Shown piece after piece: positions 32 through 13,999 of a DNA stretch of 64,000 nt. Position 1 is the stretch's first letter; every line of letters begins with the position of its first letter. The translations under genes were made by a program, and so were the position numbers. A model generated the notes under the pieces. The model saw only the letters and a list, made by a program, of their open reading frames with translations, had not been told where the DNA came from and made no database searches. The stretch is taken from positions 124,001-188,000 of the IMG/VR virus record IMGVR_UViG_3300024308_000018; one strand, 5' to 3'.

Positions 32-406
32 ATGATAAGCCTCAACACTTTTATTGCCGCGCTGATGTTGGATGACAGCGAGTCTCGCCCCATCGTTATC
101 CACGAACGCGCATTCTACCGCCTGTCCCAGTACAGCAAGCGGGACTATCCGCCCGAAGAGCTGGCCGAGAAGCTGACCGCTGAGCTGGGCGGCCAATACT
201 GCGTCGTGTACGCGGCGAACGCCATGGGCCCCTCTGAAGATTACCGGTCGTCCGACTTCCTCGTCTTCAGCCCCAACGTTGATCTCAAAGCGTTGGCCGA
301 ATGCCTCGCTACCCTGTGCGACGAACCTTTCTCGTCCTGCGGCAGCGGCGAGTGTCCGGAATATGTAAACGAGTGGATAACGGCCCACACCAAAGGAGAT
401 GCTTGA
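32..406 (+). CDS. hypothetical protein
   Basis: GGAG RBS upstream; stop overlaps the next start (TGATG at 404-408). Confidence 0.7.
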   Translation: MISLNTFIAALMLDDSESRPIVIHERAFYRLSQYSKRDYPPEELAEKLTAELGGQYCVVYAANAMGPSEDYRSSDFLVFSPNVDLKALAECLATLCDEPFSSCGSGECPEYVNEWITAHTKGDA

Positions 407-1662
407 TGCACTGCACGCTATTTGAACCACTTGACCGTGGAGCGATAGGCAGCCACCGCTGGCTGCGACGCCATGAGATCGGACGTATCGGCCAGCCGAA
501 CTATCGGATGTTCGAATACCTCCCACGGATCAGCGTTGGTCAAGCGCGCCGCATTGTCGACAACGTTAGACGTGCCCCCGCGTCTGGCCCATTACGTGAC
601 CAGCTGGCTGAACTGATTCGCCAAGGTCTGGGTGTCCCGCAAGATCTGGATCGTCTGGCTGAGCTGCGCGATCTCGACATTGCACGCGACCCTGAAAAGT
701 TGCAGGCACTCAACGCGTACCTTGACGGTCTCGACGCGTCAATCACAACGATGGAACGTTACATGAGCCCGTGGCCCTTCCTCCCCAGCGCTGACTGGGT
801 GGCAGCGACCATTGGGCACGAAGCATGGCCGTTCTTCCGGCGCGAAAAGCCGAAGGGTCAAAGCGTCAGCGTTCCGGACTACGCGGCGTATGGCATTCTG
901 ATCTACATGCAGGACGGCGTTGAGTCGAAGACGTACACGCTGTGCGACTCGTATGTGCTGAAGCGTAAAAACGGTGTGGTGGCAATCCCCACGTTGTTCG
1001 CGCACCAGCAGTCACCCAACGAGCTACCTGCGGGTGCCGACCGTGCCAAGACCAAGCGAACGTACACGATGCGCTCGCGTATTCGCGGCACCATCGACGT
1101 GACGGGTGTGATGAAGAGCGACCGGAAATATTTTGCACTGTTCGGCCTGTTCTACTTCCACGACCGTCCGGATCAGGCGCAGCTGTTGAACAAGGCATTC
1201 AAGGTGGACGTATATAAGAACCTTGAGTCCGATGTGTTCGGACAGCCTGAGCGTGTCCAGAAACTGAAAGCAGCGTTGGATGAACTGCGCCCGCGTCACA
1301 CGTTGGCCGCTGATTTCGTCGCACGTAACCGTGCCCGTGTCAGCAGCGGTAACCCGTCCGAAAAGTTGCTTGCATCGTTCGCACGTGCCGAAGCAGTGAT
1401 TGAAGAGTTCGACCGAGCCAGTCGGCGTTACCATGACGCCGCTGAGTCTGCGCCACGCAACTCGCCGATCCGTGACCTATCGTTCTACGCGCTTGACGTG
1501 ATGTTGCCTTCAACGTTCAAGCCGGAAGAGATTGAATGGAGACCTATCTTGACGGACAAGTACGCACGCGTCGCTGATAGGCTCTACGGCAACGACAAAA
1601 CTGTAAACAAGTCGCGTACCGTACAATTTTCCCTAACGCCGAAAGGCTCCCGAATCTGGTAA
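406..1662 (+). CDS. hypothetical protein (start reassigned from 301 to 406)
   Basis: AAGGAG RBS and TGATG coupling to the upstream gene; no family recognised. Confidence 0.7.
   Translation: MHCTLFEPLDRGAIGSHRWLRRHEIGRIGQPNYRMFEYLPRISVGQARRIVDNVRRAPASGPLRDQLAELIRQGLGVPQDLDRLAELRDLDIARDPEKLQALNAYLDGLDASITTMERYMSPWPFLPSADWVAATIGHEAWPFFRREKPKGQSVSVPDYAAYGILIYMQDGVESKTYTLCDSYVLKRKNGVVAIPTLFAHQQSPNELPAGADRAKTKRTYTMRSRIRGTIDVTGVMKSDRKYFALFGLFYFHDRPDQAQLLNKAFKVDVYKNLESDVFGQPERVQKLKAALDELRPRHTLAADFVARNRARVSSGNPSEKLLASFARAEAVIEEFDRASRRYHDAAESAPRNSPIRDLSFYALDVMLPSTFKPEEIEWRPILTDKYARVADRLYGNDKTVNKSRTVQFSLTPKGSRIW
1597..1617 (+). promoter_or_regulatory. repeated phage promoter-like box (AAAACTGTAAACAAGTCGCGT)
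   Basis: Matches the AAWCTGTAAAYA-N6-GT consensus; about 70 nt upstream of the 1674 gene. Confidence 0.55.
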
Positions 1663-1673
1663 GGAGATATACC

Positions 1674-4241
1674 ATGTTGATGCTCATTATTGCTAACACT
1701 GAAGGACGCAACGGCGTTGTGGGTGTTCGTCCCATTCAGTTCAACAACGCACGTCAGGCACTCGAAGCTGTAAAGGGTCAGCTCAAGATGCACGTTGCCA
1801 CCATCCATGCCGAAACCCTCAACATTGACGACACCATCCCGTTGGTTGTCGGCTTTGTTGGTCGGGGCAACGCCGCTGAGTCTGTCCTCGCTAATGTGAT
1901 GACGGCTCAAGGGGACAACACTGCCGCGTTCCTCGAACGCTGTGGCGTTATCGGCGCGTATCACGTCCCTGAGACCGACGACGCTGAAATTCTGGCTGGC
2001 TACACCGACGCGGTATTCAACAACCTCGCCACTTACCTGCCGACCGAAGAAGGCGCACCCGGTTCCCGCGAGCCGCTGGCCGTTGACGGTCTGGAATTTC
2101 TGGCGGGCGCACCGCTTAACGTTGTCGTCCATGCTGACGGCGCGCAGCTGGGCCGCCCGTCTCCCCTGCAACAAATCGGCGGCAACTCTTACGCCGAGCA
2201 GGAAGTTGAAACTGAAATCGAAACCCCCGTTGTGGCAGAAGCCCAACCTGTAATCCAATCCAAAATCGAAACCGAGGAAACTGTCATGACCGCAACCCAA
2301 ATGACCAAAGCTGACCTGATGCGTGCCGCTCGCCAGTTGCACGGCGATCTGTCTGTCGCCGTCCCCAACTTCCAGCCCATCGAGATCGCGTTCGGCGACG
2401 CTTCCCGCCTGCGCCGCTTCTGCGGTCTGAAGCTGACCAACATGGATCAGGCTACTCTGGACGAGTTGCAATCCCGCGCCGAAGAAGTTTGCCAGTGCCT
2501 GAAAGAGCTGGCCGCGCTGACTGCCACTCAAGATGACGAGCTGGAAGTCACCGCGCACGTAAGCGCTGGTTCCGACGATGACGACTTCGCTCCGGTTCCG
2601 GATCAGCAACTGGCTGATGATGACGACGAAGAGTTCGACGAAGTTGATACCGAAGTTGAGACCGACATCGAACCCACCGCTGATCTGGTTGCCGATGACG
2701 AGCTGCCTGTCGAAGCCGACACCTCTGCCGACGATCTCGACCTGAACGACATGACCGTGCTGGCCGAGAAGCTGCCCGCCGTGTTCCTGCTGACTCAAGG
2801 TCGTCTGGATGAAGTGGAAGGCGCGATGTCCGCCGTTTCCGAGTTCGCGGTGAACCTCATTACTGAGCAGGGCGGCGACTTCAACGACTTCAACGAATCC
2901 GACGTTGCTGAAGCCGTCGAGTCCGGGGAGCTGGTCAACGTCGTCACTCTGCTGGACGAATCCGACTGGCTGAACGCTGCCTCCTTCGACCTGCTGTACG
3001 AGCTGGACGGCGCACTGACTGATGCGGCGGCCGCTTCCGGTATCGACGTGCAGGGTGAAGTCGACCAGTCCGGTATCGATCTGGATACCGACGACGAAGA
3101 GATGTTGACTGACAACGACAACGACACCGACAACGACTGGGAAGAAGATGACGAAGAAGAAGACGAAGACGCTGAGCCCGAAGCTGATCTGCAAATGCTG
3201 CAAGTCACCATCGTTCCGCGTCTGGTTCTGAACCTCGTCGCCGACTACAACGGTCACGTCTACACCAAGGAGCAACGTCACGCTCTGATGGCGATGCCGA
3301 CCGAAAGCGGTCGTGTCCTGAACCTCGCTTACGGTATCTCCGGCAACGACAGCAACAACGGATCCCAAGGTGCTTACGTCCGTGCCATCGGCCGTACTGC
3401 CAAGGCGCTGGGCCAACTGGCGAACGCAACCGTGCTGCTGCCGTCCAGCTACGCTGACGTGACCGCCGACAAGCTGGCTGCTGCCGTCACTGCCGCCGCC
3501 ACTGGCACCGACATCAACGAGCTGCTGTCCAACGTGCTGGCCGACCTGCAAGGTATCGAGGTCGACGAAGAAGGCAACGTGATGATCGGCTTTGCCGACG
3601 ACGAAGGCGACGAGACCGAGCCGAAGATTGCACTGTCTGACCTGTGCGACTTCGACGTCAAGTACAGCATGATGCGTGAGCACGACTTCGGGCCTGCCAC
3701 CATCGAAGTTACTGCGCTGCTCAACATGCGTATGCCGATCCTTGGGTTCGCCAAGTACCCCGAGAAGATCGCCGCACGTCTGGCCTCGCTGGCTGACAAG
3801 CAGTTCGACCGTCACGGCGTTGACGTGTATCCGGCAATCACCTTCAACGCTGTTGATCGTATCTTCAACCGCACTGAAGAGTTCAGCGACCGCAACATCG
3901 CGTGCCTGCCGGAAGTGATCAGCGCGCTGATCGCACAAGTCAACGTTGAAGAGAGCCCGTGGGCTGGTGCAGTTGTCGCTACCCATCGCGCCGTGGTCGA
4001 AACTGGCGTGTACGGTATCGGCCTGCTGGTTGACGACTCCGAAGTCGAGCAGTACGTCCCGCTGCACGAAGTTGTCGACATCGACGCTTACGCCAGTGTG
4101 GGCAACGATGCCTGTGCCGTCCTGTGCACTCCCATCGGCGAATCCCTGTTCGGCATGGGCGGTGATACCACCATCATGCTGACCCGTGCCAAGGACGACT
4201 CCGAAGAAGAGGACGAGACCGAGCTGGACGACGCCGAGTAA
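1674..4241 (+). CDS. large, very acidic (D/E-rich) protein
   Basis: AAGGAG RBS; strong codon bias; long D/E tracts separating folded-looking segments. Confidence 0.85.
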   Translation: MLMLIIANTEGRNGVVGVRPIQFNNARQALEAVKGQLKMHVATIHAETLNIDDTIPLVVGFVGRGNAAESVLANVMTAQGDNTAAFLERCGVIGAYHVPETDDAEILAGYTDAVFNNLATYLPTEEGAPGSREPLAVDGLEFLAGAPLNVVVHADGAQLGRPSPLQQIGGNSYAEQEVETEIETPVVAEAQPVIQSKIETEETVMTATQMTKADLMRAARQLHGDLSVAVPNFQPIEIAFGDASRLRRFCGLKLTNMDQATLDELQSRAEEVCQCLKELAALTATQDDELEVTAHVSAGSDDDDFAPVPDQQLADDDDEEFDEVDTEVETDIEPTADLVADDELPVEADTSADDLDLNDMTVLAEKLPAVFLLTQGRLDEVEGAMSAVSEFAVNLITEQGGDFNDFNESDVAEAVESGELVNVVTLLDESDWLNAASFDLLYELDGALTDAAAASGIDVQGEVDQSGIDLDTDDEEMLTDNDNDTDNDWEEDDEEEDEDAEPEADLQMLQVTIVPRLVLNLVADYNGHVYTKEQRHALMAMPTESGRVLNLAYGISGNDSNNGSQGAYVRAIGRTAKALGQLANATVLLPSSYADVTADKLAAAVTAAATGTDINELLSNVLADLQGIEVDEEGNVMIGFADDEGDETEPKIALSDLCDFDVKYSMMREHDFGPATIEVTALLNMRMPILGFAKYPEKIAARLASLADKQFDRHGVDVYPAITFNAVDRIFNRTEEFSDRNIACLPEVISALIAQVNVEESPWAGAVVATHRAVVETGVYGIGLLVDDSEVEQYVPLHEVVDIDAYASVGNDACAVLCTPIGESLFGMGGDTTIMLTRAKDDSEEEDETELDDAE

Positions 4242-4281
4242 TTCTGTAAACGATAATTGTAGGGGCCGCAGTTTGGCCCCT
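4240..4281 (+). promoter_or_regulatory. promoter-like box plus hairpin
   Basis: AATTCTGTAAACGATAATTGT immediately followed by AGGGGCC-N7-GGCCCCT, with no U-tract. Confidence 0.65.
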
Positions 4282-4301
4282 TCTACTCCGAGGACAAATC
4301 A

Positions 4302-4856
4302 ATGCAACGTATTTCCCAAGTTGGTGCCATGATGGCAAACTTCGGCGAGCTGCTGACTACTATGTCGCACGCTGTTGAAGACGAAATAAACACCGCGATT
4401 CGCGACGAACAGGCGAGCGCCGCTGAACAGCTGAAGCGCACGGTTGACGACGCCAACGCCAAGATCACGAACCTCAATGCGACGAACGAGTCGCTGTCTA
4501 CGCAACTGCTGCGCAGCAACCAGCAACTCAAGGTTGCAGCCGACAAGCTGGCCGAGCTGGAAACCGAAGTCCTGCCGCTGGCTGCCATCGACGCCGACGA
4601 CGTGTTCGACAAGCTGGAAGAGCTGGACTTGGTTGTCGGCAAGCCTAACGGCGCTGGCGTGAAAGAGTCGCGCGAGCTTATCCAGAAAGTGTGCCGTGAC
4701 CTTGAACCGTTGCGTGCACGTTGCTCCCAAGAAACCCCGGCCCCGAAGCCTGCACCGAAACTTGCAGACGTTGCTGAAGCCGTGGGGAAAGCAAGCGGCG
4801 CTGCGGTCGCTAATGTAGAGGGCAACGCCGAGCCCGAGATGCCCGTCAAAGCGTAA
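4302..4856 (+). CDS. coiled-coil hypothetical protein
   Basis: GAGG RBS; heptad-like central helix. Confidence 0.8.
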   Translation: MQRISQVGAMMANFGELLTTMSHAVEDEINTAIRDEQASAAEQLKRTVDDANAKITNLNATNESLSTQLLRSNQQLKVAADKLAELETEVLPLAAIDADDVFDKLEELDLVVGKPNGAGVKESRELIQKVCRDLEPLRARCSQETPAPKPAPKLADVAEAVGKASGAAVANVEGNAEPEMPVKA

Positions 4857-4963
4857 TGGGCAATCAGCAAGTTTTATCATCATCGTTCGCAAAAGGTTTC
4901 GCGCTGAGCATTCTAATTCTTACGGCGCTGACTTCTGCACTGTCACTGGCTGCCCTAGCCTGA
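4856..4963 (+). CDS. 35-aa hydrophobic (single-TM) peptide, not in the ORF track
   Basis: TAATG coupling to the upstream stop; MGNQQVLSSSFAKGFALSILILTALTSALSLAALA. Confidence 0.5.
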   Translation: MGNQQVLSSSFAKGFALSILILTALTSALSLAALA

Positions 4964-4968
4964 CACCG

Positions 4969-4989
4969 AATTCTGTAAATAGTAATTGT
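4969..4989 (+). promoter_or_regulatory. promoter-like box
   Basis: AATTCTGTAAATAGTAATTGT upstream of the 5023 gene. Confidence 0.65.
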
Positions 4990-5022
4990 TAGTCCAACTC
5001 ACAACCCCGAAAGGAATATCGT

Positions 5023-5562
5023 ATGGCTATCGCCCCTAAGAAGAAGCAAGTTCGTTCTGACCTGATCCCTACCCGTACCAGCCGCCTGCACAACAAGAGC
5101 AGCGTTGCCGTCGGTGCTGCGGTCGCCAAGTTGTTTACCGTGCTGGTCACCTGCCGCAAGCCCGAGCAGTTTGCCGCCGTGCTGCTGAGCGACGATGACA
5201 ACAGCATCATGGTGCGCCGCAAGAAAGGCTACGGCTCTTCCAAGGTTCTGGAAGTGATGATCAGCAAGAGCGACGTTCTGGAAATCACAGGCGCTGGCGT
5301 CGGCCACGAAGCGATCATCCGCGCTGTCGGCCAAGTGCCCGAGCTGAAGCTGCCGCACCAGAAGGTCAAGAACGTTGCAGGCTGGTTGATCTGTACCGAC
5401 GCCGAGACTGGCGAGCAGACCCGCATCAACACCCGCGCCCAAGGCGTTGAAGTTTCTGTCGTCGGTGAAGACGTCAAAGAAGGCTCCGGTAAAGCCGCCC
5501 CGAAGACTGCCAAGAAAACTGGCAACGTCTCCAAGCTGCCGTCCCGCAAGCGCGAAGTGTAA
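5023..5562 (+). CDS. basic hypothetical protein
   Basis: AAGGA RBS; K-rich termini. Confidence 0.8.
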   Translation: MAIAPKKKQVRSDLIPTRTSRLHNKSSVAVGAAVAKLFTVLVTCRKPEQFAAVLLSDDDNSIMVRRKKGYGSSKVLEVMISKSDVLEITGAGVGHEAIIRAVGQVPELKLPHQKVKNVAGWLICTDAETGEQTRINTRAQGVEVSVVGEDVKEGSGKAAPKTAKKTGNVSKLPSRKREV

Positions 5563-5581
5563 GGCTACACTCCGTCCGCAA

Positions 5582-5666
5582 AAATCTGTAAACAATAATT
5601 GTTGGGAGCGCTGAGCACGGTGCTCCAGAATAAAACTGTAAACAACACAAGTAGGCAACACCGCCT
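5582..5666 (+). promoter_or_regulatory. tandem promoter-like boxes, each followed by a hairpin
   Basis: CTGTAAACAATAATTGT (5586) + GGAGCGC/GTGCTCC stem; CTGTAAACAACACAAGT (5636) + AGGC/GCCT stem. Confidence 0.65.
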
Positions 5667-5690
5667 CGTATCTATAAGGGAATTTCAGTC

Positions 5691-6488
5691 ATGGCTAAAG
5701 CTAAAACCGCAACCACCAAAACCTCCGCTAAGTCCAACAAAGCCGCTGCTGCTCCGGTGAACGCCGCAACTACTCTGCTGCATACCCTGTGCCAGTCTCT
5801 GGCTGCTGCCATTAGCGAAGACCCGAAGATCGCCAAGTTGGCTGATTCCTACGGTCTGGGTTTGGTCGGTGAGGTAGCCGACAACGAGGAAGAGGAAGAA
5901 CTCGAAGAAGAAGACGAAGAGTTCGAAGAAGAGGACGAGGAAGAAGAAGCTCCGAAGTCCAAGAAAGCCGCTTCCAAGAAAGCTCCCGCCAAAGGCGGCA
6001 AGAAAAAGAAAGCGCTGACCGCTGACGACATCATCGAAATTCTGGACGGCGACGACGCCGACGCTGCCGAGGCCGCATTCAACGATCTGGAAGACGAAGA
6101 CATGATCCGCGAGATCGCCGTCACCCTGAAGCTGGTCAAGGCCAAGGCCGCTGCCAAGACCGACGCCGACACCCTGACCGAGATGATCGGTGAGCACTTC
6201 GGCATCGGTGAAGAGGAAGAGGACGAAGAAGAAGAAGGCATCGACCCGGACGAGATGTCCGAAGCCGAACTGCTCGAATTCGTTATCGAGCACAAGCTGG
6301 CCACCAAGGTCAAAGCCAAGAAGATGGACGAGGACGAACTTCGCGCCCTCGTTGAAGAATTCCTCGAAGAAGAAGAAGAGGAAGACGAAGACGAGGAAGA
6401 GGAAGAGGAAGACGAAGAAGAGTTCGACGACGAAGAAGAGGAAGAAGAAGACGAAGACGAATTCGACGACGAGTTCGACGAAGAATAA
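5691..6488 (+). CDS. extremely acidic protein with poly-E/D tracts and two Rho-N/HeH-like helical repeats
   Basis: Three long E/D tracts; repeats DMIREIAVTLKL..KTDADTLTEMIGEHF and MSEAELLEFVIEHKL..KMDEDELRALVEEFL. Confidence 0.8.
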   Translation: MAKAKTATTKTSAKSNKAAAAPVNAATTLLHTLCQSLAAAISEDPKIAKLADSYGLGLVGEVADNEEEEELEEEDEEFEEEDEEEEAPKSKKAASKKAPAKGGKKKKALTADDIIEILDGDDADAAEAAFNDLEDEDMIREIAVTLKLVKAKAAAKTDADTLTEMIGEHFGIGEEEEDEEEEGIDPDEMSEAELLEFVIEHKLATKVKAKKMDEDELRALVEEFLEEEEEEDEDEEEEEEDEEEFDDEEEEEEDEDEFDDEFDEE

Positions 6489-6514
6489 TCTTCCTCCGGT
6501 CTGAAAAGTTTTCC

Positions 6515-6556
6515 AATCCGAAAACAGTAATTGATGGGGCGGCAAGTTCCGCCCCA
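6515..6556 (+). promoter_or_regulatory. variant promoter-like box plus hairpin
   Basis: AATCCGAAAACAGTAATTGA followed by an 8-bp TGGGGCGG/CCGCCCCA stem. Confidence 0.5.
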
Positions 6557-6596
6557 ACTTAACCCCCCCAAGCATTTAATTCTCAAGGAGCCTATC

Positions 6597-7115
6597 ATGG
6601 CTAAGACTACCGTTGTTGAAACCGCCCAGCTGTCCGCCCTTCAGAAAACTCTGAAGTCCCTGAAGTCCCAGCACGCCAAGGCCCAGAAGCAGCACGACAG
6701 CTCTGTCGCTGCCCAGACCAAAGCTCAGGAAATTTCCTCCCAGTCGCTGGCTGCGCAGGAACAAAGCATCGCTGAACTGGAAGCCCAGCTGCTGGCCGCC
6801 AAGTCCGGCGAAGCTGCTCCGGCACCTGCTGCCAAGAAAGCTCCGGCCAAAGCCGCAGCCGCCAAGCCTGCCGCTGGCAAGAAAGCTCCGGCCAAAGCCG
6901 AGAAGCCTGCCGCTGGCAAGAAAGCTCCGGCCAAAGCTCCGGCCAAAGCCGAGAAGCCTGCTACCAAGAAAGCCCCGGCCAAACCCGCCAAAGCTGAAAA
7001 GCCTGCTGCCAAGCCTGCTGGCAAGAAAGCTCCGGCCAAAGCTGCAAAAGCCGCTCCGGCCAAGAAAGGTAAAGGCAAGGGCAAAGGCGACGACCTCGAA
7101 TTCGATCTGGGTTAA
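6597..7115 (+). CDS. histone H1-like / AlgP-like DNA-binding protein (coiled coil plus PAKKA repeats)
   Basis: AAGGAG RBS before ATG 6597; N-terminal coiled coil; about 90 aa of K/A/P repeats; acidic tail DDLEFDLG. Confidence 0.85.
   Translation: MAKTTVVETAQLSALQKTLKSLKSQHAKAQKQHDSSVAAQTKAQEISSQSLAAQEQSIAELEAQLLAAKSGEAAPAPAAKKAPAKAAAAKPAAGKKAPAKAEKPAAGKKAPAKAPAKAEKPATKKAPAKPAKAEKPAAKPAGKKAPAKAAKAAPAKKGKGKGKGDDLEFDLG
6864..6937 (+). repeat. 35-bp exact direct repeat (39-nt period) in the H1-like gene
   Basis: AAGCCTGCCGCTGGCAAGAAAGCTCCGGCCAAAGC at 6864 and 6903; near-copy at 7011. Confidence 0.9.
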
Positions 7116-7156
7116 TCACCGCCGCGCAATGCCAGAGGAATAAACATCCTCGGATC

Positions 7157-7182
7157 AGGGGAGCAACGTTGCTCCCCTTTTT
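7157..7182 (+). terminator. intrinsic terminator
   Basis: Perfect palindrome AGGGGAGCAACGTTGCTCCCCT followed by a T-tract. Confidence 0.85.
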
Positions 7183-7216
7183 CTATTCTCTGCCTCACAA
7201 AACGGACTTCGCGAAC

Positions 7217-7747
7217 ATGGCCCTGCACCTTGAACTTCTTCATTCCACGTTGGATGCCGCAATCAACGCCCGGCGCACTCTCGAAACTCTCGATGTATCT
7301 TCTGCAATAAGCGGCGTCGCCAAATCCAACTGCGCACTCGCCAAGAATATCGACAAGCATATCACCGATGGGTCTGCCCATTCTCTGCTTGGTGCTCTCT
7401 TTCTCGTAAGCGATGCGGAAGCCGTAGAAGTGGCGGCTGGTCAGCTCCGCATTAGCGATCTGCCGCAACGCCATGCAGACGTTGCAGTCCATGCGGTGCA
7501 TACCGCCAAGATGCGTAACACATACACTCGCGCTGAAGGTATACGCTGGCTCGCTGAAACCCTGTGCGACATCCCCAGCGTCGACATGTTGCAAGCGTTC
7601 AACAAGGATCAGCTGATCGCACTGCGTGACCTGATCGGGTTTGCCTCAGTCTCTGGTATCGCAGACGATCCGAAAGCCAGCGTGTCCAGCGTGGCTGATT
7701 CCCTCAAGGCGCTGCGCTACCAAGAAGGCGAGCACGACCACGACTGA
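7217..7747 (+). CDS. hypothetical protein
   Basis: ORF downstream of the terminator; ATG 7217 preferred over TTG 7169, which lies inside the terminator. Confidence 0.65.
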   Translation: MALHLELLHSTLDAAINARRTLETLDVSSAISGVAKSNCALAKNIDKHITDGSAHSLLGALFLVSDAEAVEVAAGQLRISDLPQRHADVAVHAVHTAKMRNTYTRAEGIRWLAETLCDIPSVDMLQAFNKDQLIALRDLIGFASVSGIADDPKASVSSVADSLKALRYQEGEHDHD

Positions 7748-7779
7748 CGAAAACCGGACTAGGTTTCTAGCACGTCAGT

Positions 7780-7788
7780 TGGTATAAT
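7780..7788 (+). promoter_or_regulatory. host sigma70-type extended -10 promoter (TGnTATAAT)
   Basis: TGGTATAAT in the intergenic region upstream of the 7821-gyrB-gyrA unit. Confidence 0.6.
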
Positions 7789-7820
7789 AAGTGCATGGGG
7801 ACAATCACGGGTAACTGACA

Positions 7821-8195
7821 ATGAAAGCTGAGATCACGAATGTCTACACGGACTTTGACGCGCTGATGCAACAAGTCAACGCATCGCTGTTCCGACTCTA
7901 CGCTGTGCGATCCACGGACGGCTTGAATACGCCGCTCGGGTTCGTTGTTGTGTACGCCGACCTTAATCAGGCAACTGGCTTCTCGCTGCGCGTGACAATG
8001 TGTCGCGCTATCGGGCAAACCATCGAGCTTGTTTCACAGGCTCCGCTCCCGCTGCTGTCACTGTACGTCGACATCAAGCGGCAGGTTGAGGAATGGGATG
8101 GCACGCTCGCCACCTATCCACTCGCCCCTATTGCAGAAGATGACGCCAGCGACTATTACGGCGAACTCGAAACACCAGAGGATGAACTGACATGA
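7821..8195 (+). CDS. hypothetical protein
   Basis: ATGA overlap with the topoisomerase B gene. Confidence 0.7.
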   Translation: MKAEITNVYTDFDALMQQVNASLFRLYAVRSTDGLNTPLGFVVVYADLNQATGFSLRVTMCRAIGQTIELVSQAPLPLLSLYVDIKRQVEEWDGTLATYPLAPIAEDDASDYYGELETPEDELT

Positions 8196-10228
8196 GCAAA
8201 GCGCCAGTAAAGACGCGCGTCGCCAAAGCCGTGAGCAAGGCCAGTACGCAAGAGGCCAAAGACTTTCAGATCAAGGAAGGCGTCGCGGGCATTCAGGCTA
8301 AGCCGACAATGTACCTTGGCGAACTCGGCCCGCAGATGGCTTACCGCTGCGTCAAGGAAGAAGTGGACAACGCGTTAGATGAAGCGTTGGCCGGACGTAA
8401 CAAGTGGATCGAAGTCTACTACGATTACGACGAGTCGATCACAATCGTGGCGGACAAGGCTGGTGGTATCCCAGTCGAAATGAAAACGCGTGAGAACGGT
8501 GACAAGATTTCGATCCTCACCGCTGCATTCACTATCACGCACGCGGGCGGCAAGTTCGAAGACAGCGCCTACAAAGTTTCGACAGGTACACACGGCGTCG
8601 GTGTCACTGCGGTGAACGCCGTCAGTGAATGGCTGGAAGTGTGGAGTAAGCGCAAGGGCAAAATCTATCACCAGCGCTTTGAGCTGGGCCGACCCGTGAA
8701 ACCGGATCCGGTAGTGGTCGCCAGTCTCCCGAAAAACGTTGCTGCGTTGCTGACGTCGAAGGACTACGGCACTGTGGTAATGAACAAGTTGAATCAGTCC
8801 ATCGTCAGCGAAGACGCGTCGAAGGGCAAGCTGCCGAAAAACTTCCGGCCCGCCAATCCCGAGTACAAGCAACTCGGCAACTGGCTGAAGTCGATCTCGG
8901 ATCTGAACCCCGGCCTGAACATCGTGCTCACTGCGAAGAAGGGCGCGAAGTCGAAGACCGTCAGCTTCCTGAACAAGCTGAGTCACGCGGAATTCCTCAA
9001 GCAACACGTCGCCGACATTCTGGGCGAAGAGGAAGACGCGAAGTTCAAGCCGTTCATCTTGCAGACCGACTACGTGACGGCGCTTCTGCAATGGACAACG
9101 CTGCCCAACGTGCAACTGCGTTCCTCTGCGAACAACTCGCCGACCGCGAACGGTGGTACTCACGTCCGTGGTTTGATCGACGCGCTGGTCGAGGCCGTCA
9201 AGCCTTACGAAAACAGCAAGCACTTAGACAAGAAGAAACGCAAGTACGCGTCTGAGGATCTGCTGTTCGGTCTGGTCGGCTTCTTCGACTGGCGGATGCA
9301 CGGCGCTGCATTCGACTCGCAAGTCAAAGACAAGCTGGTATCCAAAGTCCAGAACGAAGTCAAAGACGCGGTACTGCCTGAGCTGGTCAAACACTTCGCT
9401 GCCAACAAAGCGCTGCCCAAGTTCATCTTGGATCGTGCGGTGCAGGTAGAGACCGGACGTCTCGCAATGTCCAAGTCGTTGTCTGCGATGGCCGACGCCA
9501 AGCGCGCAACCAAGGGCGGGGCACTGCCGCAATGTCTGGATGCAGCAAGCACCAAGGACAACACCCTGCGCGAACTCTTCTTGGTGGAAGGGGACTCGGC
9601 GGGCGGTACTGCGAAGAACGCGCGCAACCCGGTCACGCAAGAAGTGTTCAAGGCGAGCGGTAAACCAGCCAACGCGCTGAACGCTCCGCTGGACAAAGTG
9701 ATCGGTAACCCCGTGGTCGGCAACTTCCTGATCTCGCTCGGCGTTGACTTCAAAGCATTCGATGCCCAAGTGAAAGCACGTGTGCCGAACCCGACATTCC
9801 CAGTGGACAAGCTGCGCGTCCAGCGCATCTACTTCCTCGCGGACGCGGACGTCGACGGCTATCACATCAACAGTCTGTTCCTCGCGATCATCTGGAAGCT
9901 GCTGCCTGACCTGCTCTATCAGGGCCGCGTCTATGTTGTGGACGCTCCGCTGTATAACGTCATGCACAAGAAGAAGCATTACGGTGGTGCCACCAAACAA
10001 GAACTGTTGCAGAACGCGCCATCTACTGTGAAGCCGTCTGACGTTACGCGCGCCAAAGGTTGGGGTGAAGTGTCGCCCGAGATCATGGAAGCCATCGCGT
10101 TCGACCCGTCTATCCGTCGCGTTATTCGCATTCAGCCGTTCGCCAAGCAGGAAAGTTTGGCGTGGTACAATCGAGTGCTCGGGGACGACGCCAGCGCACG
10201 CCGCCAACTGCTCGGCCTGTCCAGCTAA
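8192..10228 (+). CDS. gyrB: type IIA DNA topoisomerase subunit B (GyrB/ParE-like)
   Basis: GHKL motifs EEVDNALDE, HAGGKF, GTHGVGVTAVNA; TOPRIM motifs LVEGDSAGG, DADVDG, KGWGE. Confidence 0.95.
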   Translation: MSKAPVKTRVAKAVSKASTQEAKDFQIKEGVAGIQAKPTMYLGELGPQMAYRCVKEEVDNALDEALAGRNKWIEVYYDYDESITIVADKAGGIPVEMKTRENGDKISILTAAFTITHAGGKFEDSAYKVSTGTHGVGVTAVNAVSEWLEVWSKRKGKIYHQRFELGRPVKPDPVVVASLPKNVAALLTSKDYGTVVMNKLNQSIVSEDASKGKLPKNFRPANPEYKQLGNWLKSISDLNPGLNIVLTAKKGAKSKTVSFLNKLSHAEFLKQHVADILGEEEDAKFKPFILQTDYVTALLQWTTLPNVQLRSSANNSPTANGGTHVRGLIDALVEAVKPYENSKHLDKKKRKYASEDLLFGLVGFFDWRMHGAAFDSQVKDKLVSKVQNEVKDAVLPELVKHFAANKALPKFILDRAVQVETGRLAMSKSLSAMADAKRATKGGALPQCLDAASTKDNTLRELFLVEGDSAGGTAKNARNPVTQEVFKASGKPANALNAPLDKVIGNPVVGNFLISLGVDFKAFDAQVKARVPNPTFPVDKLRVQRIYFLADADVDGYHINSLFLAIIWKLLPDLLYQGRVYVVDAPLYNVMHKKKHYGGATKQELLQNAPSTVKPSDVTRAKGWGEVSPEIMEAIAFDPSIRRVIRIQPFAKQESLAWYNRVLGDDASARRQLLGLSS

Positions 10229-11911: not shown

Positions 11912-11956
11912 AATCTGTAAACAGTAGTTTGAGAGGGTGGAGTTATTCACCCTCTC
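11911..11956 (+). promoter_or_regulatory. promoter-like box plus 11-bp hairpin
   Basis: AAATCTGTAAACAGTAGTTT then GAGAGGGTGGA-GTTA-TTCACCCTCTC. Confidence 0.6.
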
Positions 11957-13474: not shown

Positions 13475-13999
13475 GTGTCTGATCTGAAGGCAGCCGCCAT
13501 TACGAATGGTGCTCATACGCAGTGCTATATCTGTGAGCATTACTTCGCATCGATCCACTGGCACCACACTGTGCCGAGATCGTTGGGCGGCCACGCCGAA
13601 CTTCAGATACCGCTCTGTGGCTCATGCCACACAGCACTGCACGCAAAGGCTAGTGCAGTGTTCGCTATCGTTAGAGGAACGGGCAAGAAGAAGGTAGTCG
13701 GGAGTTACTGGGCCAGAGTATCGGACGAACAAAGAGCCGAGCGATGGTTACGGGTATTAGTTGGCGCTATGCTATTCCCTCCAGTCGAGCGCGAGGATAA
13801 AACGACCGTGCTACCTGCCTTGACCGTAGACCCATATCGTCGATACGTGCTTGAAGTGATCAAGCAGGATGCGAATCTGAAAAGCATATCACAGGCTTTG
13901 CTTTTCTGTATCGACTATACCGCATCGAGTAAAGGACTTAACAATAATGAAAAAGAAAACAAAACAAGGAAATCAGGGAATAACCGTAAGCTGTGGTGA
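13475..13999 (+). CDS. HNH-fold protein
   Basis: CYIC...HWHHTVPRSLGG...IPLCGSCH motif. Confidence 0.8.
   Translation: MSDLKAAAITNGAHTQCYICEHYFASIHWHHTVPRSLGGHAELQIPLCGSCHTALHAKASAVFAIVRGTGKKKVVGSYWARVSDEQRAERWLRVLVGAMLFPPVEREDKTTVLPALTVDPYRRYVLEVIKQDANLKSISQALLFCIDYTASSKGLNNNEKENKTRKSGNNRKLW

What the first reader, a model, noticed from the sequence alone, without database searches (positions are those of the whole stretch)
1674..7115. Co-regulated acidic and basic disordered proteins next to the topoisomerase: possible phage chromatin/condensate module
Seen: an 855-aa D/E-rich protein, a basic 179-aa protein, a 265-aa protein with poly-E tracts and two Rho-N/HeH-like repeats, and an H1/AlgP-like protein (coiled coil plus PAKKA repeats). 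Each has its own CTGTAAA box and strong codon bias, and the cluster lies just upstream of gyrB/gyrA. Knowledge: in eukaryotes H1 tails are chaperoned by polyacidic proteins (prothymosin-alpha, nucleoplasmin), and such opposite-charge pairs coacervate. Inference: a linker-histone/acidic-chaperone pair that compacts or shields phage DNA or builds a shell-less replication compartment. Alternatively the acidic proteins are DNA mimics acting against host defences.
Basis: partly seen in the sequence, partly recalled or inferred. Interest (0 to 1): 0.72.

Follow-up and report, generated by a model that had tools for sequence, protein, structure and literature searches.

The report
Conserved acidic/basic protein module in jumbo phages
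A group of jumbo phages keeps a block of very acidic and very basic, apparently highly expressed genes under a control signal found nowhere else in the genome and switched on with the DNA-replication genes; it may coat or organise phage DNA, but only sequence-level evidence exists.

Summary
The genes are real and the block is conserved. Order and charge sign of A (453 aa, basic), B (855 aa, net -131), C (184 aa), D (179 aa, pI 10), E (265 aa, 38% D/E) and F (172 aa, Lys/Ala/Pro repeats) recur in Erwinia phages Yoloswag, Y3 and Alexandra, Dickeya phage JA11, Pseudomonas phage PaBG (without C) and several metagenomic contigs.

- B has four predicted folded domains joined by acidic linkers.
- D is a folded beta protein.
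- F has no exact CTGTAAA box.
- The topoisomerase link is only positional: a terminator and a different promoter type lie between, and PaBG lacks the adjacency.

New findings:
- CTGTAAA also precedes the SSB, DNA polymerase, primase, dUTPase and dCMP deaminase genes.
- The fuller element CTGTAAA-N2-3-TAATTG occurs three times in 229.7 kb, before C, D and E. F has a degenerate copy.
- B, D, E and F are in the lowest 1-6% for effective number of codons.
- Every F orthologue ends in an acidic-Phe peptide.
- The module's PaBG orthologues are absent from its published virion proteome.

No known family or fold matched. A replication-phase polycation/polyanion DNA-organising role is the best reading. 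DNA binding, E-F pairing and condensates remain untested.

The parts
301..1662 (+). Gene A: 453-aa basic protein (net +22), the conserved upstream neighbour of the module. It matches phrog_37619 (unknown function).
   Evidence: It is 30% identical to Yoloswag gp318. Orthologues occupy the same position in all relatives, including PaBG_128.
1601..1607 (+). CTGTAAA box 66 nt upstream of the B start codon, inside the 3' end of gene A.
   Evidence: A box is conserved at the same position in L011, L016 and L010.
1674..4241 (+). Gene B: 855-aa protein, net charge -131. It has four predicted folded domains (1-160, 208-285, 355-470, 506-842) joined by disordered polyacidic linkers (162-207, 286-353, 472-505).
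   Evidence: There is no Pfam or PHROG hit and no significant fold match. Eleven proteins (including the query's own cluster) were found in metagenomes. PaBG_127 appears to keep only the C-terminal domain, judged by eye from the shared F-x-x-GGD motif; blastp gave no B hit in PaBG.
4244..4259 (+). Bipartite box CTGTAAA-CGA-TAATTG upstream of C. It is followed by a GC hairpin at 4262-4280.
4302..4856 (+). Gene C: 184-aa acidic helical protein (heptad a/d hydrophobic fraction 0.61). It diverges fast and is absent from PaBG.
4973..4988 (+). Bipartite box CTGTAAA-TAG-TAATTG upstream of D.
   Evidence: The box is conserved upstream of D orthologues in L011, L016, L010, Yoloswag and Y3, with a TGTGTAAA variant in L014.
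5023..5562 (+). Gene D: 179-aa basic protein. It has a conserved N-terminal peptide (PTRxxRLHNKS), an all-beta domain (38-148) and a Lys-rich tail. It matches phrog_22271.
   Evidence: The fold matches only uncharacterised proteins of phages Alexandra and PaBG and two unnamed entries. There are 44 cluster representatives among 1.84 billion proteins. Only noise-level likeness (Z no higher than 5.1) to small beta-barrels was found.
5586..5642 (+). Two boxes upstream of E: the bipartite CTGTAAA-CAA-TAATTG (5586-5601), a hairpin (about 5605-5626), and a second CTGTAAA (5636-5642).
   Evidence: (hairpin z-score -2.6). Doubled boxes also occur upstream of E in L011, L016 and Yoloswag.
5691..6488 (+). 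Gene E: 265-aa hyperacidic protein. In order it has a short basic N-terminus, a conserved helix (about 24-62), a poly-E tract, a Lys-rich patch, two helix/Lys-linker/helix motifs (about 128-172 and 186-230), and a poly-E tail ending EFDDEFDEE.
   Evidence: It matches phrog_30618. Its ESM Atlas model has pLDDT 0.51 and its nearest named clusters are SAP, Rho_N and HeH. The internal repeat score is reached by 67 of 2000 shuffles.
6518..6555 (+). Degenerate box CCGAAAA-CAG-TAATTG (6518-6533) and a GC hairpin (6536-5555 read as 6536-6555) without a T-run, between E and F. E and F may be co-transcribed.
   Evidence: The four intergenic + strand TAATTG copies in the whole genome are those upstream of C, D, E and F.
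6597..7115 (+). Gene F: 172-aa protein. It has a polar N-terminal helix (about 1-72), Lys/Ala/Pro repeats (about 73-163; DNA periods of 39 and 51) and the C-terminal peptide DDLEFDLG.
   Evidence: There is no Pfam hit. Atlas look-alikes are Hc2 and AlgP_helical clusters at scores below 0.9. An acidic-Phe C-terminus is present in all orthologues.
7157..7178 (+). Intrinsic terminator (9-bp GC stem followed by TTTTT) that closes the module after F.
   Evidence: z-score -3.0.

Best explanation
The region is the core of a lineage-specific, replication-phase gene module of the PaBG / Y3 / Yoloswag group of jumbo myophages. The module encodes proteins that are probably abundant and non-virion, with extreme and opposite charge.

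Proposed roles:
- F is an H1/AlgP-like polycation: a helical N-terminus, Lys/Ala/Pro repeats and a conserved acidic-Phe C-terminal peptide.
- D is a basic protein with a folded beta domain and a Lys-rich tail.
- E is a disordered polyanion with short helical motifs.
- B is a large multi-domain protein whose domains are strung on polyacidic linkers.

Proposed mechanism: F, and perhaps D, bind and compact or coat DNA non-specifically. The polyacidic tracts of E and B act as a counter-charge. They could keep the polycations soluble, compete with DNA and so tune binding, and give multivalent interactions through their acidic-Phe motifs.

Shown here: the genes, their composition, folded versus disordered parts (as predictions), co-conservation, a shared and module-specific upstream motif, motif sharing with replication genes, and strong codon bias.

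Inferred only: that the motif is a promoter; timing of expression; abundance; DNA binding; E/B-F/D interaction; any condensate or compartment.
For: 1. Co-conservation. Order A-B-(C)-D-E-F and the sign of each protein's charge hold in the window, in IMG/VR contig L010, in metagenome contigs L011-L016, and in Yoloswag, Y3, Alexandra, JA11 and PaBG.
2. Co-regulation. CTGTAAA-N2-3-TAATTG occurs only three times in 229,746 bp, upstream of C, D and E. All four intergenic + strand TAATTG copies are upstream of C, D, E and F. The box is conserved upstream of D and E in relatives whose proteins are only 25-60% identical.
3. Regulon. CTGTAAA also lies 20-80 nt upstream of the genes for SSB, DNA polymerase (1045 aa and 207 aa), primase, dUTPase and dCMP deaminase. 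No structural gene was among the 20 downstream ORFs scanned. A sigma-70 region-2-like ORF sits next to the SSB gene, as in PaBG (PMC7412058).
4. Expression proxy. ENC of B, D, E and F is in the lowest 1-6% of genes.
5. Not major virion components. The 14 proteins of the PaBG virion proteome do not include gp124-128 (PMC7412058).
6. F has the composition of bacterial H1-like DNA binders. Its C-terminal acidic-Phe peptide is conserved while the repeats drift.
7. The theme recurs in replication-linked genes of the same genome. The SSB has alternating Lys/Ser and poly-D/E blocks. Two genes just upstream of the window carry Lys/Pro repeats, poly-E tracts and an EGEFDLE C-terminus.
Against: - No protein of the module matches any Pfam family, solved structure or known fold, so every functional statement rests on composition and context.
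- The F+D+E complex prediction gave no answer: score 0.00, and the tool says not to use it either way.
- That CTGTAAA is a promoter is itself an inference. About half of the intergenic copies are followed directly by a GC hairpin, which could mean another role.
- ENC is less reliable for low-complexity proteins.
- Metatranscriptome contigs cover the region only patchily at depth 2-10 and may be DNA carry-over.
- The PaBG proteome covered only Coomassie-visible bands.
- Lys/Ala/Pro tails also bind other polyanions such as polyphosphate, as reported for AlgP (PMC9239181), or RNA.
Confidence: 0.4

Rival explanations
1. Host take-over or anti-defence. The polyacidic proteins E and B act as DNA or polyanion mimics that soak up host DNA-binding proteins such as H-NS/MvaT-like silencers, HU, restriction enzymes or RNA polymerase. 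F and D bind host DNA or another host polyanion (RNA, polyphosphate).
For: E and B are the most acidic proteins in the genome. Phage DNA mimics such as T7 Ocr are acidic and can also target RNA polymerase (PMC7064336, listed). AlgP-type tails associate with polyphosphate granules (PMC9239181, listed). The orphan, fast-evolving sequences fit host-interaction genes.
Against: Known DNA mimics are compact folded proteins with a rigid array of carboxylates. E is predicted to be mostly disordered (Atlas pLDDT 0.51) and there is no Ocr or ArdA Pfam hit. The module is conserved across phages of Erwinia, Dickeya, Pseudomonas and unknown hosts, which argues against a host-specific target. It shares its motif with replication genes, not with the TGGTATAAT-type host-like promoter seen nearby.
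Confidence: 0.2
2. Virion-associated internal or assembly proteins. In this reading, acidic coiled-coil scaffold-like proteins (B, C) and basic proteins (D, F) are packaged with the DNA as counter-ions or ejected into the host.
For: Large phages package charged internal proteins and use acidic scaffolds (general knowledge of T4). C has a very weak match to Phage_scaffold, PF06810 (E = 0.054, far below the cut-off). High codon bias also marks structural genes.
Against: The PaBG orthologues are not among the 14 identified virion proteins. The motif is shared with replication and nucleotide-metabolism genes, and none of the 20 ORFs checked downstream of it is structural. The gene neighbours are topoisomerase, sigma-like factor, SSB and RecA, not head or tail genes.
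Confidence: 0.07
3. There is no joint function. The genes are neighbouring orphan genes with low-complexity tracts that expand easily by replication slippage. Their shared promoter class simply reflects their position in a middle-gene block.
For: The charged tracts are DNA tandem repeats (GAA/GAC with periods of 6-39; periods of 39 and 51 in F) whose length varies between relatives. Other charged low-complexity proteins are scattered through the genome. C is lost in PaBG, and B is reduced there to one domain.
Against: Adjacency and charge sign of D, E and F persist over divergence down to about 25-30% identity. The TAATTG half-site is under-represented genome-wide: 6 and 11 copies on the two strands, against about 31 per strand expected from composition (my own calculation). 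Yet it marks exactly C, D, E and F. Short conserved features, namely the N-terminal peptide of D and the C-terminal peptide of F, indicate selection.
Confidence: 0.18

Closest known systems
Eukaryotic linker histone H1 with prothymosin-alpha or nucleoplasmin-type acidic chaperones (from general knowledge; not searched here)
   Same: A Lys/Ala/Pro-rich polycationic tail (F) is encoded next to a disordered polyglutamate-rich protein (E). Opposite charges of this size would be expected to associate.
   Different: F has no winged-helix globular domain and E has no nucleoplasmin core (no Pfam hits). There is no sequence homology. No interaction has been shown. The setting is a phage replication regulon.
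Bacterial H1-like proteins: Pseudomonas AlgP and Chlamydia Hc1/Hc2
   Same: An N-terminal helical part is followed by KPAA/PAKKA-type repeats. Atlas feature look-alikes of F include Hc2 (0.80) and AlgP_helical (0.69) clusters. Repeat number varies between relatives, as reported for Hc2 (PMC2848022, listed).
   Different: F scores below the 0.9 lead threshold and has no Pfam match at E <= 0.1. F carries a conserved acidic-Phe C-terminal peptide and an adjacent hyperacidic partner gene. AlgP is linked to polyphosphate granule spacing (PMC9239181).
Acidic C-terminal tails of single-strand DNA-binding proteins: E. coli SSB, T7 gp2.5, T4 gp32 (from general knowledge)
   Same: Short acidic peptides with an aromatic residue lie at the C-terminus of F (DDLEFDLG), E (EFDDEFDEE), the 461-aa upstream protein (EGEFDLE) and a 112-aa protein (DEEFE). 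In SSBs, such tails dock onto partner proteins or fold back on the protein's own DNA-binding surface.
   Different: The Phe is not the last residue. No partner has been identified. These proteins are not OB-fold SSBs. This phage's own SSB ends in a basic peptide.
Phage-driven condensates: SPO1 Gp27 (PMC13401047)
   Same: A phage-encoded protein with a modular, multivalent architecture concentrates nucleic-acid machinery during the middle phase of infection.
   Different: Gp27 is a transcription factor and its phase separation was shown experimentally. Here nothing has been shown, there is no homology, and the charge-pair architecture differs.
Phage DNA-mimic proteins such as T7 Ocr (PMC7064336)
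   Same: Strongly acidic phage proteins.
   Different: Ocr is a compact folded dimer that imitates bent B-DNA. E is predicted to be disordered, and B is a four-domain protein with acidic linkers. There is no family match.

Membership tests
Linker histone H1/H5 (Pfam PF00538) | Winged-helix globular domain | tested here: not met
   The Pfam scan of F found no family at E <= 0.1, and the scan of its N-terminal 75 residues found none of relevance at E <= 5. The N-terminus is a polar helix.
Linker histone H1/H5 (Pfam PF00538) | Lys/Ala/Pro-rich basic tail | tested here: met
   F residues from about 73 to 163 consist of PAKKA/AKPA-type repeats. Overall F is 30% Ala, 9% Pro and 21% K+R, with net charge +22.
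AlgP-type bacterial H1-like proteins (PF27285 AlgP_helical plus KPAA repeats) | AlgP N-terminal helical domain | tested here: inconclusive
   There was no Pfam hit, but I could not confirm that this recent model is in the copy scanned. The Atlas feature look-alike scores 0.69, which is a lead only. The word-based homology search with residues 1-80 found nothing.
Chlamydial Hc2 (PF07382) | Match to the Hc2 repeat model | tested here: not met
   There was no Pfam hit at E <= 0.1. The Atlas look-alike cluster scores 0.80, a level that shuffled proteins reach a third of the time.
HeH / SAP / Rho_N / LEM helix-extension-helix motifs (E repeats) | Match to a SAP, Rho_N, HeH or Ish1 model, or the two-helix fold | tested here: inconclusive
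   The window protein gave no hit at E <= 5. The L011 orthologue hits Ish1 at E = 0.016, below the cut-off. The nearest named Atlas clusters are SAP, Rho_N and HeH at 0.62-0.72. BLASTP finds no similarity between the two repeats, but an ungapped 37-residue alignment is reached by only 67 of 2000 shuffles.
DNA-mimic proteins (Ocr, ArdA type) | Compact fold displaying carboxylates with the spacing of DNA phosphates | tested here: not met
   E and B gave no Pfam hit. The Atlas model of E has pTM 0.26 and pLDDT 0.51. The acidic tracts of B are the parts below pLDDT 50.
Acidic histone chaperones (prothymosin-alpha or nucleoplasmin type) | Direct binding to the basic partner | not testable with these tools
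   The complex prediction of F+D+E returned 'no answer' and the tool states it is not evidence either way. Fuzzy electrostatic complexes cannot be predicted this way.
Phage scaffold or internal head proteins | Presence in proheads or virions and late expression | tested here: not met
   The PaBG virion proteome of 14 bands lacks gp124-128 (PMC7412058), though its sensitivity is limited. The upstream motif is shared with replication genes. The Phage_scaffold hit for C has E = 0.054 and 13.9 bits against a cut-off of 35.
SSB-type acidic C-terminal docking tails | Conserved acidic peptide with an aromatic residue at the extreme C-terminus | tested here: met
   The C-termini of F orthologues read DDLEFDLG, EIKFDLN, ALDFKL, DEDFDFEVA, EDFDFDME, GFEFELDD and DFEDFDDLD. 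No binding partner is known. No clamp gene was found with TIGR00663 or PF02768.

The most novel reading that the evidence does not exclude
E and F act together with B, D, the charge-blocked tail of the phage SSB and the two Lys/Pro-plus-poly-E proteins just upstream of the window. Together they form a complex-coacervate 'replication factory' around phage DNA. This would be a shell-less, charge-driven counterpart of the protein-shelled nucleus of chimalliviruses, assembled on cue by a dedicated promoter variant. The acidic-Phe peptides would serve as the multivalent stickers.
Probability: 0.12. Interest if true: 0.85.

Novelty: new variant of a known kind. Interest (0 to 1): 0.55.

Why it matters
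If the proteins do what their composition suggests, this would be a conserved phage-encoded pair of an H1-like polycation and a polyglutamate partner. I found no description of such a pair in three literature searches.

It would give a bacterial-virus model for charge-driven DNA organisation that can be tested directly, because cultured relatives exist: PaBG on P. aeruginosa PAO1, Y3, Yoloswag and Alexandra on Erwinia amylovora, and JA11 on Dickeya solani.

It also bears on how jumbo phages that have not been reported to build a protein-shelled nucleus organise replication, at a time when phase separation in phage development has only just been shown (SPO1 Gp27, PMC13401047).

Independently of function, the bipartite CTGTAAA-N2-3-TAATTG element is a clean candidate promoter or operator for this phage group.

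Tried and rejected
- **Family scans.** Pfam and PHROG scans of whole proteins and of single predicted domains gave only function-unknown PHROGs.
- **PDB sequence searches** for A, D and F found nothing meaningful.
- **Homology searches.** tblastn of B against 50,697 phage records found no match. The word-based homology search with F residues 1-80 found nothing.
- **D in the viral library.** Foldseek matched only uncharacterised phage proteins.
- **Complex prediction of F+D+E** returned no answer.
- **Clamp-binding idea for the F tail.** I could not find a clamp gene with TIGR00663 or PF02768. The 412-aa ORF next to the polymerase gene has no PDB sequence match. I dropped this idea as untestable.
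- **Metatranscriptome contigs.** They cover the region patchily at depth 2-10, with a spurious peak on a GAA repeat. The tool warns that DNA may be present, so this is not usable as expression evidence.
- **Is B a paralogue of the other giant acidic protein (765 aa)?** No blastp match.
- **Sigma-70 consensus promoter scan** found none in 1400-8300.
- **Do hairpins follow CTGTAAA more than they precede genes in general?** No difference in mean folding energy.

Full report
**Where the window lies**

The window is bases 124,001-188,000 of a 229,746-bp IMG/VR virus record rated 100% complete. GC content is 56.6%. Near-identical DNA occurs in subsurface and wastewater metagenomes. The nearest named relatives are the jumbo myophages Erwinia Yoloswag, Y3 and Alexandra, Dickeya JA11/AD1 and Pseudomonas PaBG. 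This is the 'Lupandier group' of PMC7412058.

**Check of the observation**

The region holds six + strand genes, not four:

| Gene | Coordinates | Length | Character |
|---|---|---|---|
| A | 301-1662 | 453 aa | net +22 |
| B | 1674-4241 | 855 aa | net -131 |
| C | 4302-4856 | 184 aa | acidic, helical |
| D | 5023-5562 | 179 aa | pI 9.97 |
| E | 5691-6488 | 265 aa | 38% D/E |
| F | 6597-7115 | 172 aa | Lys/Ala/Pro repeats |

- Among 219 ORFs of at least 100 aa, B has the most negative net charge, E the highest D/E fraction, and F ranks fifth in K+R fraction.
- Codon bias is real. ENC values are 36.3, 32.7, 31.0 and 35.3 for B, D, E and F, against a median of 45.9, which is the lowest 1-6%. ENC is less reliable for low-complexity proteins, but D is not low-complexity.
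- Long antisense ORFs across B and E (827 and 296 aa) are shadows of the GAA/GAC repeats.

- B is not simply disordered. AlphaFold2 on a 14-sequence alignment gives four folded domains (1-160, 208-285, 355-470, 506-842; mostly pLDDT 70-90). Three acidic linkers fall below pLDDT 50. All four folded domains are conserved in orthologues.
- D has an all-beta domain at residues 38-148, block-mean pLDDT about 83-92. It sits between a conserved N-terminal peptide and a Lys-rich tail.
- The N-terminal helix of F is only weakly coiled-coil-like.
- The two 'HeH-like' motifs of E have weak support.
  - Pfam gave no hit for the window protein. An orthologue hits Ish1 at E = 0.016.
  - The nearest named Atlas clusters are SAP, Rho_N and HeH at 0.62-0.72.
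  - The internal-repeat alignment score is reached by 67 of 2000 shuffles, and BLASTP finds nothing.

**Regulation**

CTGTAAA occurs 39 times in the genome, against about 18 expected from composition (my own calculation). Nineteen copies are intergenic although only 6.4% of the genome is intergenic. Strand follows gene direction, and 24 copies have a same-strand start codon within 140 nt.

Downstream genes include the following:
- SSB
- the 1045-aa DNA polymerase and a 207-aa polymerase-family protein
- primase
- dUTPase
- dCMP deaminase
- two acetyltransferases
- a peptidase

No structural gene appeared among the 20 ORFs checked. A sigma-70 region-2-like ORF lies beside the SSB gene, as in PaBG (PMC7412058). 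A phage-directed promoter class is therefore plausible but not shown.

The fuller element CTGTAAA-N2-3-TAATTG occurs only three times in the genome, upstream of C, D and E. TAATTG itself is rare, with 6 and 11 copies on the two strands.

The bipartite box is conserved upstream of D and E in L011, L016, L010, Yoloswag and Y3.

The module ends at an intrinsic terminator at 7157-7178. The next unit (H and the topoisomerase genes) is preceded by TGGTATAAT at 7780-7788. This host-like extended -10 is conserved in L011 and L010.

**Conservation**

The order A-B-C-D-E-F, then two small ORFs, then topoisomerase II, recurs in metagenome contigs L011-L016, in IMG/VR contig L010, and in Yoloswag, Y3, JA11 and Alexandra. 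Charge signs are unchanged: B is -116 to -190, D +12 to +16, E -66 to -100 and F +22 to +31.

PaBG keeps the following:
- A (gp128).
- What looks like a one-domain B (gp127). It shares the F-x-x-GGD motif, which I judged by eye; blastp gave no hit.
- D (gp126).
- E (gp125, net -93).
- F (gp124, net +31).

PaBG lacks C. Its module lies about 13 kb from the topoisomerase genes, near the sigma-like factor, SSB and RecA genes. The topoisomerase adjacency is therefore not a conserved feature.

The D family is small and phage-restricted, with 44 cluster representatives among 1.84 billion proteins.

Every F orthologue ends in an acidic-Phe peptide, while its repeats drift. Similar tails end E, a 461-aa protein just upstream of the window, and a 112-aa protein elsewhere in the genome that also has a CTGTAAA box upstream.

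**What it is not**

No Pfam family, PDB sequence or known fold matches any module protein. F is therefore an H1/AlgP/Hc2 look-alike by composition only. E is not a structured DNA mimic. The PaBG orthologues are not among the 14 identified virion proteins.

**Mechanism**

The best-supported reading (confidence 0.4) is a replication-phase, non-virion polycation/polyanion set acting on DNA.
- F, and perhaps D, would act as non-specific DNA binders.
- E and the linkers of B would act as counter-charge.
- The acidic-Phe peptides would act as docking or auto-inhibitory elements. The analogy is with SSB-type tails, from general knowledge.

All biochemical steps are inferred. The F+D+E complex prediction gave no answer and RNA evidence was unusable. 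The rival readings are host take-over or polyanion mimicry (0.2), no joint function (0.18) and virion or internal proteins (0.07).

**Novelty**

Three literature searches found H1-like bacterial proteins, DNA mimics and one recent phage phase-separation case (SPO1 Gp27, PMC13401047). None described this module. I rate it a new variant of a known kind, of moderate interest. It is directly testable in cultured relatives.

Noticed in passing
G000:C1:120916-123533 (just upstream of the window start): Two more + strand genes share the theme. One is a 365-aa protein with a C-terminal AKKP/KPEAK repeat tail. The other is a 461-aa protein with KPxxKP repeats, an HeH-like segment, poly-E tracts and the C-terminus EGEFDLE, the same motif as in F. 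Both have very low ENC (34.9 and 33.4). PaBG_131 resembles the 461-aa protein. The module probably extends beyond the finding and the window.
   Followed up: partly
G000:C1:82137-83396: The SSB-like gene (phrog_15004) has a C-terminal tail of about 170 aa made of alternating Lys/Ser-rich and poly-D/E blocks with repeated SRFDDDEDE units. This is a blocky polyampholyte on a core replication protein. A sigma-70 region-2-like ORF lies just upstream (81601-81747; E = 2.5e-4, below the Pfam cut-off).
   Followed up: partly
G000:C1:216266-218563 (- strand): A second giant acidic protein (765 aa, net -123) carries several CxxC pairs in its N-terminal half. It is not a B paralogue by blastp.
   Followed up: partly
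window 7780-7788: TGGTATAAT, a host-like extended -10, lies upstream of ORF H and the topoisomerase genes. It is the only + strand TGnTATAAT in the genome and is conserved in L011 and L010. The topoisomerase unit may therefore belong to a different temporal class from the charged module.
   Followed up: partly
window 4262-4280, 5605-5626, 6536-6555, 11930-11955; also G000 20299, 54908, 85842, 190754, 193509: About half of the intergenic CTGTAAA boxes are followed within a few bases by a strong GC hairpin. The order is stop codon, box, hairpin, ribosome-binding site. I did not resolve whether the hairpin is the previous gene's terminator or a 5' stabilising stem of the new transcript.
   Followed up: partly
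window 7169-7747: The listed TTG start of ORF G (7169) lies inside the terminator stem after F. An ATG at 7217 is a more likely start.
   Followed up: no
window 1584-4067 (-) and 5685-6575 (-): Long antisense ORFs of 827 and 296 aa lie opposite B and E. They are artefacts of GAA/GAC-rich repeats and misled a simple longest-ORF gene call.
   Followed up: yes
window 13475-13999: A 174-aa ORF with an HNH-like motif (HWHHTVPRSLGG ... CGSCH) is conserved in Yoloswag gp331.
   Followed up: no
window 1500-7300: Near-identical DNA is present in wastewater, subsurface, food and bird metagenomes. Fragments also occur in wastewater and leaf-litter metatranscriptome assemblies at low depth. The phage or close relatives appear to be environmentally widespread.
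   Followed up: partly
G000:C1:80186-81067 and 85902-86396: Two GNAT-type acetyltransferase genes (phrog_3810) carry the same CTGTAAA box as the Lys-rich proteins. Whether they act on those proteins is unknown.
   Followed up: no
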